In this document: in pieces, positions 58,375-64,000 of the stretch
Layout of the letters: each line of letters opens with the position of its first letter
Position numbering within the stretch: the stretch's first letter is position 1
Assembly: GCA_964304625.1 (NCBI GenBank)
Contig: OZ199838.1
Coordinates: forward strand, 3,730,505 to 3,794,504
Length of the DNA stretch: 64,000 nucleotides
Direction: 5' to 3'
From: Kudoa neothunni
Lineage: Eukaryota; Animalia; Cnidaria
Made by a program: the position numbers and the translations under genes
The notes under the pieces: model-generated
Seen by the model: the letters and a program-made list of their open reading frames with translations, nothing else
What the model was told of the DNA's origin: nothing
Database searches by the model: none

Positions 58375-58995
58375 TCATCTATCAAAGCGTGCATCTTTTG
58401 CAGCTTGATACAGAATCTCGATTGTTAACTCGAGTCGGTTGCATATTGAAATTACAAACACCTGTTTAACTGGAAAATTACAATTGGACGCGGTCATTAC
58501 GGATCTGGGGCGTTTCCTTAAAGAAAAAGAGTTACCTTCTGCATCAGCAGGAAGGCTCTCACAAAAATCATAACTTAAATTGGGATTTAAGCGCGGATTT
58601 AAACTATCTTTAGCGAGTAAGTACGAGTTAAACGTAGCATCGTTAAAATAGAGATGGTTAAAGCACGCCAATTTACTGGCGTGAGTGAAATCATAAATAG
58701 ATACGGGATTATTGATGAGGAAGTTAGACAGATTACCTAGGTATACCGGGTCAGAACCCGCTTCTCTACATCTAGGATTATCAGGATTAATATTAACAGT
58801 AGGTAGGATAAATATAAGGTTGGATTTGGGCTGGGGGGAAGCCTCATTAAATGATAAATTATTTGAATTAGAAGTAAGTAAAATTAAGGTTAATTGAATT
58901 AGAATTAACCATCGTTTAAATTGTTTTAGCTGCTTCAGATGTAGAGTCCACTGTCGAACTAATTTCAACAGCTTTCTCTTCATCTTCCGCAGCAT
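58375..58995 (-). other. Orphan, Asn/Ser-rich coding-like segment, probably frameshifted at its 5' part
   Basis: 206-codon open frame, GC-richer than its flanks, with no recognisable domain. An alternative frame at the 5' end gives a more natural SSINAAEDEEKAVEISSTVDSTSEAAK. Confidence 0.35.
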
Positions 58996-60474: not shown

Positions 60475-60927
60475 TTATACGGCGAAACTTCCCATTACCT
60501 TAGAAACTATATTGGAGAAAGAATCGTTATAATGAAAGTATATAGACAGATCTTTGATGATTTCAACGGCGCCATCGGCCAAAATTAACTCATCAGGAAA
60601 AGTCCCGTGAGTGTACTCATCACGAACAAGGTTGCAGAACTTGTTCAGTGACGTATTTAAAATTGTTTTATTGCGACGAATCGCAGTTAAAATACGCCTT
60701 CTTTCTTTGGACGATTTCTCGTCCAAAGTCGCAAATGCGGCGGCGCAGTTAGGAGATGGCTCGTTTTCGAGGGCAATCAACTCAGTTTGTAATTTAAGGA
60801 TTCGCTCGCTAACACGGTGGTAGTCTGCTGCACCCAAACACAAAGCAGGAAGCTTCTTGCCTCGGCCACGGCCCTTTAAATAGGCTTGAAAATAAACGTG
60901 CAATGCTCGTCTATTCTCGTCGCCCAT
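60475..60927 (-). CDS. Orphan 150-aa intronless ORF downstream of the tRNA fragment
   Basis: ATG-initiated, GC-richer than background, helical-looking sequence with no recognised domain. Confidence 0.4.
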   Translation of the reverse strand: MGDENRRALHVYFQAYLKGRGRGKKLPALCLGAADYHRVSERILKLQTELIALENEPSPNCAAAFATLDEKSSKERRRILTAIRRNKTILNTSLNKFCNLVRDEYTHGTFPDELILADGAVEIIKDLSIYFHYNDSFSNIVSKVMGSFAV

Positions 60928-61083
60928 GCTTTAAGTTAAAATGGACAAAATTCCGCGATAAATCGCTCAATTTTAATACTTAAAGCAACCCCACTAAAAA
61001 GCTATGTGGATCGTTAGATGCGCAAAAAAGAGCTCTATCAAACGATACCAACAAGTTTTTAATAAAAAAATTACTTGGGGGAG

Positions 61084-61095
61084 AAAAACCCAAAA
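61084..61095 (-). terminator. Pol III oligo-T terminator of the tRNA gene
   Basis: TTTT and TTTTT lie 4 and 11 nt after the discriminator on the minus strand. Confidence 0.6.
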
Positions 61096-61099
61096 CAAC

Positions 61100-61128
61100 T
61101 GATCCCGACGCGACTTGAACGCGCAACC
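61100..61128 (-). tRNA. 3' half of a tRNA-Trp gene (variable loop, T arm, acceptor 3' strand); 5' half absent at this position
   Basis: The minus strand reads GGTTGCGCGTTCAAGTCGCGTCGGGATCA, versus the eukaryotic tRNA-Trp end GGTTGCGTGTTCAAATCACGTCGGGGTCA. The T stem GCGCG/CGCGT has a compensatory change, the T loop is TTCAAGT and the discriminator is A. Confidence 0.85.
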
Positions 61129-64000
61129 GCCCGTAATTATACAATATGGTATCTACGAGATAAAATAAAATTGTTTAGAGCTAACGCTAATGAGTTATGT
61201 GGAAATTTCGATCTTCGGAAGCCATCGGTTATCATCGGTTAGAGGGGACAATTCTTCACGCCGTCCCCGGACGGGGGACAGCGGGTTGGGATTTTGACAA
61301 AGAAGCCATTTGAATATTTGTAGTGGGCGGTTTGGGATTTGGTTGGCTTCTTGCTTGAGTGGTGGTGGATGGAGCCGGACCAGCATTTAAATTTAGACGT
61401 GGGGGGTTTCTCTTACGGACATGGTTGTACCATACCGCTCGAGAGCCCTCCAAAATGGAAAGAGTTATCCTCTTGCTGAGCCTCTTCTGCTTATGCATCG
61501 AGATCCCAACAAGAAGATAACCCTCGCGGTTAAGTGAGTGGTGTGACCCAAGAGAACCGTAAACCAAAGCGCTGCAACTAACTTTGTAGCCTAGATTCTC
61601 AAGGGCCGCCTTCTCCGGTAAATATTTGGCTATTTTAGTTATTCTAGCCTGGTCAAGACGGCGGGAATTAGCTTCGTAACTTACAGTTACATCCACTATC
61701 TTCACCTCCTTCTTGACGCGATTAAAAATAACTATATCTGGTCGGCGGGTAGAAGAAATAACTGGGATTCTCTGGTCGTAGAGAACTTCCCAGGACTTAC
61801 CTTCGGGTTTGATCATTTTAATGAGCTCCTCCATAACATTGTTATGGCGCAACTGTATGAGGGACTGCCCATGAGGACACGAATTAAGGACATGGCCCAA
61901 AGATTCAATGTCACACGGACAGTGTCTACATTTTGCGTCAGGAACTGACTTGGCACGTTTTAAAGCGTATCTGGTGGGAAGAGTATTAGCACGACCCATG
62001 ACAGCGAACCTATAAACAGGGGTAGATACGTTACCAGTTCGCAGCCATGAATTGGCCTCCTTCAACCCAGAAAAACACTCCACAGATCTCCCCTGATCAG
62101 GAAGCGCTTTCCAGTTACGCAGGAATATTAATTGATTGTGCCATCGAAGCCTGCGAATTCGAGTGGCGGTTACTTTATATCGTTCTGGAACAAACGATGG
62201 ATCATTAAGTGTAGACAAGTCCAAATCCACACTCATATGATCTTCCTCATCACGCAGGTTAAATTTAATTCCAGCAGATTTGCGATTAAGGCGTAGAGAA
62301 GAGAGCAGACTTCTTACATCCCTAATACGGCCAATCTCCTGGTCAAGATTAAGGTAGTCGACAGCGTTTAGAGTGGAATTGGTTCTTCGACTGATGATTT
62401 CATCTAGTGACTCACGAGCTATATTCTTGATCCTATCGTCTCCAGAATGAAGAACGTTAAGACCAGAAGCTAGTCGAAGAGCCACATAGTCCTTGTGAAG
62501 GTTTCGAAGGCCCAATCCACCAAGATTAACGGGGGTGAATAGTTGCGCTTTAGTATGACAATTAGGGAGTTGCAACCACTGACGAACATGCTTGACGACA
62601 AGCCTGTCCGTCCTTTTTAAATCCTCAATTTTTAAACAATTATTTTTGAGGGTAAAGTCTAGAGTTGGATAAAGATAAACTCGCAACAACTCTAGCTTCA
62701 TAAATGGCAGCAACAGCGCATTTGATAATTTAATAAAATTAGCCTCAAACTCTTTAATAGCAGGCAAAGGATCTTTAAATGAATTCAGATCTTTACAAGT
62801 ACCTAAATACTTATAAAAATCTTCCATCATCGGGATCGGTTGTTGCTGAAGAGTGAGGGGAATTAAGGAAGGGTCGTTGACTACACGTCTGCCGTTTTTC
62901 TTAAAAACACTTAAGGAAGCGCATTTGTTAATATTAACTGAAAGAGAATTTTCAGAACAAAAATCCTCAAATTTAGTTAATAAAGAACTAATCTCGGTTC
63001 TTTCATTGGCCAAAATCACAATGTCATCTGCATAACAGAGGGCACCGATCTTTTGACCACGCAAACTATAACCTAAATTAGAAACGTCAACCTTCTTAAG
63101 GTATTTATCTATAATTAGATTAAAAAGAAGTGGAGACATGGGACAACCTTGTCTCACACCTCTACCATTCGGCAGAACTCTCGCGGTAGCACCAGTGCTA
63201 TCGCGGGCAAGGGAAAAGCATTTTTCATACAAGTTAGAGATAAAATTGATGACATTGATATTGACATTACGCTCTCTAAGTTCGTTTAAAACTAAATGGT
63301 GGGGAACAGAATCAAAAGCTTTACGAATGTCCACCCAGACAGCCGAAAGCTTTTTGCTACCCCGACGAGTATCATCAAGAATTTCTTGAAGAGTGAATGC
63401 ATGCTCAACACATCCATCACCTTCTTGAAATCCTTTCTGAGAAGGGGAAAGTTTAATTAGTTTGGCCAACGCGGTTAACCACAGACATAAAAACTCTATA
63501 TAGCGTCTGAGTGACACTAATAGGTCGATAGTCAAGTGGGTCGTTAGAATTTGGAGTGGGAGATTTGGGAAGAAGCACCAAACGGGATTCTAACCAATCC
63601 TCCGGAATCTTACCTTGTTCTAGAATTAAATTAAACAGAGGCGTCAGAATAAACTCCGCAAAAGGAAGTCTCTTCCAGAACAACATCTGGATACCATCGG
63701 TACCGGGAGATGTGTCCCTCTTGGCCCTTTCGAGCGCAAGAGCCACCTCTTCTTCTTTAATAATGAAAGAAGGTGTGAACTCATCATCATTAACTGATTC
63801 TGAGGACACGTTAAGATTGGGAATTTGATTTAAATTTAAATTATCATTTAAACTGGAATTAACTCTAGTTACGTCCTTATTTAAATTTGAATTTGAATTT
63901 AAACTCGAGCTGGGTTTTAAAATAGAAGAAATTAAATTGTCGCAAGTGGCATCAGTTAAAGTAGGGTTCGAAGACGAAGCACCTACATTTAAGTTGTTAT
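61129..64000 (-). mobile_element. Non-LTR retrotransposon with restriction-like endonuclease (R2/NeSL/R4 group); 5' part beyond window
   Basis: Coding region 61256->64000 with one frameshift at about 63470. RT motifs SPGTDG, YRPIS, QKGF, VDIRKAFDSV, GVRQGCPMSPLLF, YADD and KYLG. CCHC knuckle CRHC..ESLGHVLNSC, RHN, and endonuclease RRPDIVI...IVDVTVSYE...KIAKY. About 125 nt of 3' UTR abuts the tRNA half. Confidence 0.95.

What the first reader, a model, noticed from the sequence alone, without database searches (positions are those of the whole stretch)
61084..64000. REL non-LTR retrotransposon joined to the 3' half of a tRNA-Trp gene: candidate tRNA-Trp-specific element
Seen: about 125 nt after the stop codon of an RT-CCHC-PD..D..K ORF, the same strand runs directly into the last 29 nt of a tRNA-Trp followed by an oligo-T terminator. 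There is no poly(A) at the junction and no D arm upstream. Established: REL-encoding elements (R2, R4, R5, NeSL, Utopia) insert by target-primed reverse transcription at fixed sites in multicopy RNA genes (rRNA, SL RNA, U2), leaving downstream target sequence at their 3' junction. Inference: this element cuts tRNA-Trp genes near the anticodon-stem/variable-loop boundary (about 61128-61135). I know of no described tRNA-Trp-specific REL family. I recall tRNA-associated cases for other tRNAs, so novelty needs checking.
Basis: partly seen in the sequence, partly recalled or inferred. Interest (0 to 1): 0.82.

Follow-up and report, generated by a model that had tools for sequence, protein, structure and literature searches.

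The report
Retrotransposon stacked behind the tRNA-Trp gene
An R2-like jumping gene has entered the genome's only detectable tryptophan-tRNA gene just after the anticodon at least twice, yet a complete tRNA gene still heads the stack, apparently because each copy arrives with its own replacement for the end of the gene; about twenty other tRNA genes in this genome carry related elements in the same way.

Summary
On the minus strand an RT-CCHC-PD..D..K ORF stops at 61256. After a 122-nt 3'UTR it runs, without poly(A), into the last 34 nt (not 29) of tRNA-Trp(CCA), then two T-runs. The junction lies between tRNA positions 39 and 40 (window 61134/61133).

The simple "split tRNA" reading fails. 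Upstream of this copy lies another tRNA 3' part and a second copy with an intact 1798-aa ORF. One complete tRNA-Trp gene heads the array 12 kb away and is the only one BLAST finds in the genome.

The two copies differ by 21 synonymous and 1 non-synonymous change, so they come from a selected, active lineage rather than from neutral duplication.

Related families (43-50% aa identity) sit the same way behind Gln, Asn, Thr, Ser, Phe and Lys genes. 17 of 20 RT clusters have a tRNA gene at their head. Relatives in two other assemblies do the same, and Asn-linked lineages pair across organisms.

In the Gln array the tRNA's last bases and terminator vary with the downstream element. So the element supplies them, which argues against a plain target-site duplication.

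tRNA-specific RLE elements are published for Pro, Arg and Glu; Trp specificity and target-preserving stacking are not. This scan had already noted the system in neighbouring windows. No RNA data exist.

The parts
63455..64000 (-). Upstream part of the element ORF (codons ~884-1060 of the 1798-codon ORF seen intact in the neighbouring copy). It is out of frame with the rest because of a 2-nt length difference at 63471/63472. The ORF continues beyond the window end into a 200-N assembly gap.
   Evidence: A read-derived contig with this copy's SNPs lacks the 2-nt difference.
62909..63454 (-). Reverse transcriptase domain. The Pfam RVT_1 match also extends upstream across the frame break.
61877..61930 (-). 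CCHC zinc knuckle (C-x2-C-x9-H-x4-C)
61622..61741 (-). Restriction-like endonuclease core, PD ... D ... K..K. It aligns to the RLE of the R2 structures.
61256..61258 (-). Stop codon of the element ORF
61134..61255 (-). 3'UTR, 122 nt. About 12% different from the neighbouring copy between 61165 and 61229, and identical in the last 31 nt.
61134..61163 (-). 3'-terminal module. A small hairpin (TATCT/AGATA) is followed by the box ATATTGTATAATTA, whose core TTGTAT is invariant in 8 related families.
61100..61133 (-). tRNA-Trp positions 40-73: 3' strand of the anticodon stem, variable loop, T arm, acceptor 3' strand and discriminator. This is the relic of the former head gene at the element's 3' junction.
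61080..61099 (-). Trailer with two T-runs (Pol III terminator type). It is identical behind the intact gene and behind both relics.
60928..61079 (-). 5'UTR of the next (terminal) unit, with the motif ATCTAACGAT at 61010-61019. The motif is shared by the Trp, Ser, Phe, Lys and (one mismatch) Thr families.
60560..60927 (-). First ~122 codons of the terminal unit, 99% identical to the young copies. Identity drops sharply at ~60560.
58453..58851 (-). Remnant of an old, diverged element (44% aa identity to codons 389-517 of the Trp element). It is the oldest layer of the stack.

Best explanation
The window holds the 3' two-thirds of one member of a head-to-tail stack of a tRNA-Trp-specific, R2-like (RT + CCHC + restriction-like endonuclease) non-LTR retrotransposon.

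Inferred mechanism. The endonuclease nicks the antisense strand of the tRNA-Trp gene between positions 39 and 40. Reverse transcription is primed there, which gives the precise junction of 3'UTR to tRNA position 40. The new copy carries at its 5' end its own version of at least the last bases of the tRNA plus a double Pol III terminator. It probably carries the whole 40-73 segment, which would serve as homology for joining. The part of the gene displaced downstream is therefore replaced, and a complete tRNA-Trp gene is left in front of the element. That gene can be hit again, so copies pile up behind it with the oldest furthest away.

The 34-nt piece at 61100-61133 is the 3' part of the head gene as it stood when the window copy arrived.

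Shown: the anatomy, the restriction to this locus, purifying selection between copies, the recurrence at other tRNA genes and in other organisms, and the covariation of tRNA end and trailer with the downstream element in the Gln array. Inferred: nick position and strand, TPRT, the RNA's ends, and present activity.
For: (1) Layout, read on the minus strand: tRNA 1-39, then [tRNA 40-73 + trailer + 5'UTR + 1798-aa ORF + 3'UTR] twice, then tRNA 40-73 + trailer + 540 nt of a further unit.

(2) Locus restriction. The 3'UTR-junction probe and the tRNA probe match only this locus. BLAST finds one full tRNA-Trp gene.

(3) Selection. The window copy and the neighbouring copy differ by 22 substitutions over ~908 codons, 21 synonymous and 1 not. 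In RT-RLE the count is 14:0. Variants in read-derived contigs give 18:0 from codon 886 onward. Neutral decay of a DNA duplicate would give mostly non-synonymous changes.

(4) Recurrence. 17 of 20 RT clusters have a tRNA gene less than 8 kb upstream on the same strand, against a chance of ~0.4% per cluster. Gln, Asn, Thr and Ser arrays start with an intact tRNA, and every unit ends at position 36-40 of that same tRNA.

(5) Other organisms. Relatives in metagenome ERZ28624939 and in a contig of fish assembly GCA_027704905.1 are also tandem and end at Asn, Lys and initiator-Met 3' parts. In the RT tree all of them form one clade (100/100), and two Asn-linked lineages each pair across organisms. 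Target choice is therefore inherited.

(6) Supplied versus duplicated. In the Gln array, trailer type and tRNA bases 67-68 follow the downstream element. Type A is always preceded by type a, and type B by type b, whatever 3'UTR lies upstream. If insertion is always at the head, the head gene must have switched GG to AA and back to GG as B and then A arrived. The Lys array agrees.

(7) A read-derived contig bridges 3'UTR, tRNA part and 5'UTR.
Against: - No RNA evidence. The RNA and WGS raw-read runs under the same organism label contained no reads of this stretch, so transcription, RNA ends and current activity are untested.
- All three Trp junction units are identical, so supplied versus duplicated cannot be tested at this locus. 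It rests on the Gln and Lys arrays, where recombination inside the shared 30 nt of the tRNA part could give the same pattern.
- The array is interrupted by a 200-N gap. Its assembled 5' half disagrees with read-derived contigs, so copy number and order are uncertain.
- No N-terminal zinc finger, Myb or other DNA-binding domain was found. How the target is recognised is unknown.
- An excess of wobble pairs between the native and supplied tRNA halves was not seen.
- The terminal unit is a young 5' end fused in register to an old remnant. The model does not predict this.
- A tRNA-like site with a CCA-compatible loop at C3:6019538 could not be read, so a second, divergent tRNA-Trp gene is not excluded.
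Confidence: 0.7

Rival explanations
1. Long target-site duplication only, as in rotifer R9. The bottom strand is cut at 39/40 and the top strand some tens of bases downstream. The tRNA 3' part and trailer are then duplicated from the target, and nothing is carried by the element.
For: It gives the same layout for a single insertion: an intact gene upstream and a 3' part downstream. An RLE element with a 126-bp duplication is on record (reference 22 in PMC5035012). All three Trp units are identical, so the Trp locus itself cannot exclude it.
Against: In the Gln array the two flanks of one element differ from tRNA base 67 onward. They match the type of the downstream element instead. The same holds at one Lys unit. 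A duplication could therefore reach base 66 at most. The double T-run trailer is a shared feature of families at different tRNA genes and in other organisms.
Confidence: 0.12
2. One old insertion followed by local tandem duplication or unequal crossing-over. There is no continuing site-specific retrotransposition.
For: Only one locus holds this family. The 5' parts of the units are identical in the assembly. Unequal exchange is known to expand double insertions of site-specific elements (PMC5932611, listed).
Against: The 21:1 ratio of synonymous to non-synonymous differences between copies does not fit neutral decay of duplicates. The 3'UTRs differ by ~12% while the ORFs differ by ~0.6%. About 20 loci with different tRNAs, cross-species pairs and intact ORFs of 1645-1901 aa all point to mobility. 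Unequal exchange probably contributes but cannot be the whole story.
Confidence: 0.06
3. One reading: an ordinary R2-style insertion that splits the tRNA gene, with the 5' half at the element's 5' end and the 3' half at its 3' end, and so inactivates that gene copy.
For: The 3' junction looks exactly like an R2-type junction.
Against: No 5' half is joined to any element 5' end. The head gene is complete (73 nt, Rfam 58.6 bits, normal cloverleaf) and is the only tRNA-Trp that BLAST finds. Splitting it would remove the only decoder of UGG.
Confidence: 0.03
4. Targeting by tethering to the Pol III machinery, as in Dictyostelium TRE or yeast Ty3, rather than by sequence-specific cleavage. The tRNA fragment would be a by-product of read-through transcripts.
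For: All targets are Pol III genes. No DNA-binding domain was found. Close relatives sit at different tRNAs: Lys, Ser and Thr fall in one clade.
Against: Junctions are nucleotide-precise inside the gene, at position 36-40, and constant within a family. In tRNA-Ser, which has a long variable arm, the junction follows the anticodon stem and not the distance to the B box. Each family is confined to one tRNA species. The element encodes a restriction-like nuclease, not an AP-type one.
Confidence: 0.05

Closest known systems
R2 elements (28S rDNA-specific RLE non-LTR retrotransposons; solved structures 9nl3, 9dou R2Tg, 9nl2, 8gh6 R2Bm)
   Same: Single long ORF with RT, then a CCHC knuckle and a PD..D..K nuclease at the C-terminus. 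E 4e-64 to vertebrate R2 proteins across both modules. No poly(A). Precise 3' junction with downstream target sequence. In R2, target sequence on the RNA ends is thought to help joining.
   Different: The target is a tRNA gene rather than 28S rDNA. The ORF is ~700 aa longer at the N-terminus, with no zinc finger or Myb found. No HDV-like ribozyme or R2 3' element was detected by Rfam. The target gene is left complete and copies stack in tandem.
NeSL-clade tRNA-specific families NeSL-1_TV (tRNA-Pro), LIN15_SM (tRNA-Arg) and LIN25_SM (tRNA-Glu), Kojima & Jurka 2015, PMC4640811
   Same: RLE-type non-LTR elements whose 3' ends abut a fixed internal position of one tRNA species. The LIN15_SM 3' ends printed in that paper's supplement contain 'ttgtataataata', which resembles the 3' box here.
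   Different: Those families hit multicopy tRNA genes at many loci. No intact gene in front of the element, no carried 3' part and no stacking are described for them. tRNA-Trp is not among their targets. Phylogenetic membership could not be tested because no Repbase sequences were available.
Rotifer R9 (28S-specific, 126-bp target-site duplication)
   Same: An RLE element whose insertion leaves the upstream target extended by a long duplicated stretch.
   Different: In R9 the repeat is target-derived. Here the tRNA end and trailer follow the element.
Bacterial and archaeal integrative elements (phages, islands) that integrate into the 3' end of tRNA genes and carry a replacement 3' end in attP (own knowledge)
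   Same: The same logic: enter a conserved, essential tRNA gene and restore it with a carried copy of the displaced part, leaving a partial tRNA repeat at the far end.
   Different: Those use tyrosine or serine recombinases on DNA. This element is a eukaryotic reverse-transcribing element with a nuclease and forms multi-copy stacks.
Dictyostelium TRE5/TRE3 and yeast Ty1/Ty3 (tRNA-gene-associated retrotransposons)
   Same: They live next to tRNA genes in compact genomes.
   Different: They insert up- or downstream of tRNA genes by contact with Pol III factors, at many tRNA species. TRE elements use an AP-type nuclease and Ty elements an integrase, and neither enters the tRNA gene body.
Dada DNA transposons (PMC8869645)
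   Same: Family-specific insertion inside tRNA genes, often around the anticodon loop.
   Different: They are DNA transposons with a DDE transposase. They disrupt copies of multicopy genes.

Membership tests
RLE-type (R2-group) non-LTR retrotransposon | Reverse transcriptase of the non-LTR type | tested here: met
   Pfam RVT_1 E 7.6e-29 (window piece) and 1.1e-33 (intact neighbouring copy). R2 structures are the best PDB matches.
RLE-type (R2-group) non-LTR retrotransposon | C-terminal CCHC knuckle followed by a PD-(D/E)xK restriction-like endonuclease, and no AP endonuclease | tested here: met
   CCHC at window 61877-61930. D573, D588 and K607/K610 align with the RLE of 9nl3. No Pfam AP-endonuclease hit.
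RLE-type (R2-group) non-LTR retrotransposon | No LTRs, no poly(A) required, and a precise 3' junction with target sequence | tested here: met
R2 clade proper | Insertion at the conserved 28S rDNA site | tested here: not met
   The target is tRNA-Trp position 39/40.
R2 clade proper | N-terminal zinc finger(s) and Myb DNA-binding motifs | tested here: not met
   No Pfam hit at E<=0.1 and no C2H2/CCHH pattern in six family ORFs. Before the RT only the blocks around codons 690-790 are conserved. The Atlas gave nothing.
R2 clade proper | 5' HDV-like self-cleaving ribozyme and the R2 3'UTR element | tested here: inconclusive
   An Rfam scan of 60500-61600 at E<=10 found neither. Divergent ribozymes can escape detection.
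R2 clade proper | Position inside the R2 clade in an RT phylogeny against Repbase R2, R4, NeSL, HERO and CRE | not testable with these tools
   No Repbase sequences were available. In my tree the tRNA-linked clade is sister to one unnamed metagenomic protein and then to R2-like proteins.
tRNA-gene-specific NeSL-clade families (NeSL-1_TV, LIN15_SM, LIN25_SM) | All copies end at one fixed position of one tRNA species | tested here: met
   Both copies and the terminal unit share the 39/40 junction, and there are no copies elsewhere.
tRNA-gene-specific NeSL-clade families (NeSL-1_TV, LIN15_SM, LIN25_SM) | Independent insertions in several copies of a multicopy target | tested here: not met
   Only one tRNA-Trp locus exists by BLAST. 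All copies lie in one stack.
Pol III-tethered tRNA-associated retrotransposons (TRE, Ty3) | Insertion outside the tRNA gene at a set distance, at many tRNA species, with an AP nuclease or integrase | tested here: not met
   The junction is inside the gene, there is one tRNA species per family, and the nuclease is an RLE.

The most novel reading that the evidence does not exclude
A clade of eukaryotic R2-like retrotransposons has evolved the bacterial-island trick. Each family enters one particular, often single-copy and therefore essential, tRNA gene just 3' of the anticodon. It rebuilds the gene from a carried copy of the tRNA's 3' part plus Pol III terminator. The 3' half and terminator of the host's only tRNA-Trp gene are then transposon-supplied and are renewed with each insertion. 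Element and tRNA co-evolve, and the gene becomes a self-regenerating landing pad.
Probability: 0.5. Interest if true: 0.85.

Novelty: new variant of a known kind. Interest (0 to 1): 0.75.

Why it matters
Site-specific retrotransposons are thought to survive by hitting multicopy genes, where a disrupted copy is cheap. Here the target appears to be a single-copy, essential gene that stays whole. That would be a different survival strategy for a eukaryotic retrotransposon, and it converges on phages and genomic islands that restore the tRNA gene they integrate into.

It makes several questions testable:
- how the 5' junction of RLE elements is formed (homology carried on the RNA versus duplication of target);
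- how target specificity switches between tRNAs among close relatives that lack an obvious DNA-binding domain;
- whether part of a host tRNA gene can be maintained by a transposon.

R2-type enzymes are being developed for transgene insertion. A natural set of about 20 related enzymes, each aimed at a different tRNA gene and leaving it functional, would be a useful comparative resource.

Tried and rejected
- **Wobble-pair test.** If the 3' half is supplied by the element, stems that join the two halves (acceptor, anticodon) might carry more G-U or mismatched pairs than stems within one half (D, T). In five head tRNAs the counts were 8/60 against 5/44, so there is no signal.
- **Pseudo-tRNA test.** I looked for a complement to the tRNA acceptor 3' strand in the 3'UTR. 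Best matches were 5-6 of 7 pairs, which 45-100% of shuffles also reach, so this is rejected.
- **B-box ruler.** The distance from the junction to the T-loop box is 14-18 nt in most families but 24 nt in tRNA-Ser. The cut follows the anticodon stem, not a fixed distance.
- **Mature tRNA as source of the 3' part (template jump).** Rejected, because the part is followed by the genomic trailer and not by CCA.
- **Ribozyme or known RNA motif.** The Rfam scan gave only noise.
- **Reads.** Two RNA runs and one WGS raw-read run with the same organism label gave zero reads. The label is probably the host's, so this is no test of expression or of the assembly. Only contigs from the source sample matched.
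- **N-terminal domain.** Pfam, motif patterns, a family alignment and the protein Atlas gave nothing. I did not fold it.
- **Control set of unoccupied tRNA genes.** I did not try to read those places by other means. As a result, the double T-run cannot be compared with native trailers, and the tRNA-like site at C3:6019538 stays unread.
- **Other contexts.** The contexts of P0002, P0004 and P0006 were short or decayed and uninformative.
- **Organism identity.** Not determined. A related element inside a fish assembly fits that but does not prove it.
Full report
**Observation**

The element lies on the minus strand. The last 732 codons of a long ORF (window 63454..61259, stop 61258..61256) carry a reverse transcriptase (Pfam RVT_1, E 7.6e-29). 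The best solved relatives are R2 retrotransposon proteins (9nl3, 9dou, 9nl2; E 4e-64). The alignment covers both the RT and the C-terminal CCHC knuckle and PD..D..K nuclease.

A 122-nt 3'UTR follows. From 61133 to 61100 the strand is 34/34 identical to positions 40-73 of a tRNA-Trp(CCA) gene, and two T-runs follow. There is no poly(A). The junction is between tRNA positions 39 and 40, in the 3' strand of the anticodon stem.

**What lies around it**

The window is G000:C1:3730505-3794504. Read along the minus strand, the locus has these parts in order:
- a complete 73-nt tRNA-Trp gene (3803426..3803354);
- a trailer with two T-runs;
- a 5'UTR of about 170 nt including that trailer;
- an intact 1798-codon ORF (3803184..3797791);
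- a 3'UTR;
- tRNA positions 40-73 again, with the same trailer and 5'UTR;
- the window's copy, with its 3'UTR;
- tRNA 40-73 once more (the finding), with trailer and 5'UTR;
- the first ~122 codons of a further unit.

At window ~60560 identity falls, in register, from 99% to about 65%. Further on (58851..58453) an ORF fragment is 44% identical to codons 389-517 of the element. The stack therefore ends in an old, decayed member.

No tRNA 5' half is joined to any element. The only 5' half belongs to the complete gene at the head.

**Is the tRNA gene unique, and is the family confined to it?**

A BLAST search with the full tRNA at E<=10 finds the head gene and the two 34-nt relics only. The probe spanning 3'UTR and junction finds only this locus.

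The Rfam tRNA model lists 38 genes, but only 63 of about 2,556 candidates were scored, so this is a lower bound. A pattern search for a CCA-type anticodon loop followed by a T-loop hits one further tRNA-like place, C3:6019538. Single copy is therefore likely but not proven.

**Are the copies products of transposition or of DNA duplication?**

Over the ~908 codons shared inside the window, the window copy and its neighbour differ by 22 substitutions. 21 are synonymous and 1 is not. In the RT-nuclease part the count is 14:0. The 3'UTRs differ far more, about 12% over 61165-61229.

Contigs built from reads of the source sample carry the window copy's variants and continue past the window end. From codon 886 onward their differences from the neighbour are 18:0 synonymous. 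In the N-terminal region they are 7:9.

Such a ratio cannot come from neutral decay of a duplicated segment. The copies descend from a lineage selected for a working RT and nuclease.

The window copy's frame is broken by a 2-nt length difference at 63471/63472. The read-derived contig that carries the flanking window-copy variants does not show it. A 200-N gap, with 112 bp repeated on either side, starts right after the window end. The assembled 5' half of this copy is 100% identical to the neighbour but disagrees with the reads. The array is therefore imperfectly assembled, and its copy number is a minimum.

**The same design elsewhere**

The RT-nuclease protein matches 68 places that fall into 20 clusters. 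17 clusters have a tRNA gene less than 8 kb upstream on the same strand, against a chance of about 0.4% per cluster.

I read several of these loci. Arrays or single elements sit behind intact tRNA-Gln(TTG), Asn(GTT), Thr(TGT) and Ser(AGA). Elements also end at Phe- and Lys-type 3' parts. ORFs are 1645-1901 codons long and 43-50% identical to the Trp element in RT-RLE. Every unit ends at position 36-40 of the tRNA that heads its array.

Most families share a 3' box (invariant TTGTAT). All share a double T-run directly behind the tRNA end.

Relatives outside this genome behave alike. Two scaffolds of ENA metagenome ERZ28624939 have units ending at Asn and Lys 3' parts. A contig in fish assembly GCA_027704905.1 has three tandem units ending at an initiator-Met-like 3' part.

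In a maximum-likelihood tree all these elements form one clade (100/100). Its sisters are one unnamed metagenomic protein and then R2-like proteins. Two Asn-linked lineages each pair this genome with the metagenome. Lys-, Ser- and Thr-linked elements are close relatives, and tRNA-Lys(CTT) hosts two unrelated lineages. The Trp element is a lineage of its own. Target choice is thus inherited over speciation but can switch.

**Carried 3' end or target-site duplication?**

The Trp units are identical at the junctions and cannot decide this. The Gln array can. It contains element types A to D with distinct 3'UTRs. It also has two trailer types that differ from tRNA base 67 onward: the acceptor strand reads ..ACGGCC or ..ACAACC, followed by unlike trailers.

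Type A is preceded by trailer a in all four cases. Type B is preceded by trailer b. This holds whatever element lies upstream. The two flanks of a single element can differ.

If insertion is always at the head, the head gene's bases 67-68 must have changed from GG to AA when B arrived and back to GG when A arrived. That means each newcomer brings them. The Lys array gives the same picture.

A plain duplication of target, as in rotifer R9, is therefore contradicted beyond base 66. At least the end of the tRNA and its terminator come with the element. Recombination within the 30 shared bases of the tRNA part could mimic this pattern, so I hold the conclusion at about 70%.

**Mechanism proposed**

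By analogy with R2 (established knowledge):
1. The nuclease nicks the antisense strand at 39/40.
2. The freed 3' end primes reverse transcription at the RNA's 3' box.
3. The cDNA end, which carries the complement of tRNA 40-73 and trailer, pairs with the displaced sense strand of the target and guides second-strand synthesis.
4. The gene in front is restored and the old 3' part is left behind the new copy.

Only the anatomy is shown; these steps are inferred. Three things are not explained: how the RNA's 5' end would come to lie in the tRNA, how the target is recognised without a detectable DNA-binding domain, and why the terminal unit has a young 5' end fused in register to an old body. One possibility for the last point is repair or gene conversion starting at the cut site.

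**Comparison with what is known**

tRNA-gene-specific RLE elements are published: NeSL-1_TV (Pro), LIN15_SM (Arg) and LIN25_SM (Glu) (PMC4640811). The 3' ends of the planarian family even resemble the 3' box here. Targeting a tRNA is therefore not new.

I found no report of a Trp-specific family, of an RLE element that leaves its tRNA target complete, or of such stacks behind single-copy tRNA genes. The nearest functional analogue is the prokaryotic integrative element that restores the tRNA 3' end from attP (own knowledge).

**Earlier notes of this scan**

Earlier notes describe the same system at Cys, Gln, Lys and Met genes and, as a first-stage note, at the Trp head gene in the adjacent window. 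This finding is thus the downstream end of a thing already seen. I rechecked the architecture and the Gln argument myself. My additions are:
- the synonymous-only divergence between the Trp copies;
- the cross-organism tree;
- the mis-assembly around the gap;
- the old remnant at the array's end.

**Verdict**

The element is a new, Trp-specific member of a target-preserving variant of R2-like retrotransposons. Interest is high. The main gaps are RNA data, biochemical evidence and a clean long-read assembly of the array.

Noticed in passing
G000:C1:3794505-3794704 (directly beyond window end 64000): A 200-N assembly gap inside the element, with 112 bp repeated on both sides. The assembled 5' half of the window copy (3794705-3797096) is 100% identical to the neighbouring copy. 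Read-derived contigs show about 18 further differences and a 12-nt insertion there, so the array looks collapsed or mis-joined.
   Followed up: partly
window 60560 and 58453-58851 (minus strand): The terminal unit switches, in register, from 99% to about 65% identity. It continues as an old element remnant, 44% aa identical to codons 389-517. A young 5' end on an old body suggests gene conversion or repair starting at the tRNA cut site.
   Followed up: partly
window 61134-61163; L047:6365-6400, L046:4053-4088, L045:6390-6425, L041:6355-6390, L054:5251-5286: Shared 3'-terminal box (invariant TTGTAT), preceded in several families by a 4-5 bp hairpin whose stem sequence differs between families (TATCT/AGATA, TGGCC/GGCCA, GATC/GATC). 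This may be the RT recognition module. Planarian LIN15_SM 3' ends in PMC4640811 supplement 5 read similarly.
   Followed up: partly
G000:C3:6019538-6019567 (+): A tRNA-like stretch with a CCA-compatible anticodon loop and a T-loop box. It is not among the 38 Rfam tRNA hits and could not be read. It might be a second, divergent tRNA-Trp or a relic.
   Followed up: no
G000:C1:2553944, C1:7912071, C2:5868454, C3:6863491: A nearly identical 33-nt stretch with a T-loop-like box recurs at four dispersed loci. It may be a small tRNA-derived repeat.
   Followed up: no
L052 (GCA_027704905.1, contig JANIIK010003181.1): A fish genome assembly contains a 12.8-kb contig made of three tandem units (period ~4.26 kb) of a related element, each ending at an initiator-Met-like tRNA 3' part. 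This is probably DNA of a related parasite inside the fish assembly.
   Followed up: partly
G000:C2:1.007-1.039 Mb (L040-L042): The tRNA-Lys(CTT) array holds two phylogenetically unrelated element lineages, which points to independent acquisition of the same target.
   Followed up: partly
window 1-60000: No ORF of 300 aa or more in 60 kb, in contrast to the 1798-codon element ORF. Host genes here must be split into short exons, or the region is gene-poor.
   Followed up: no
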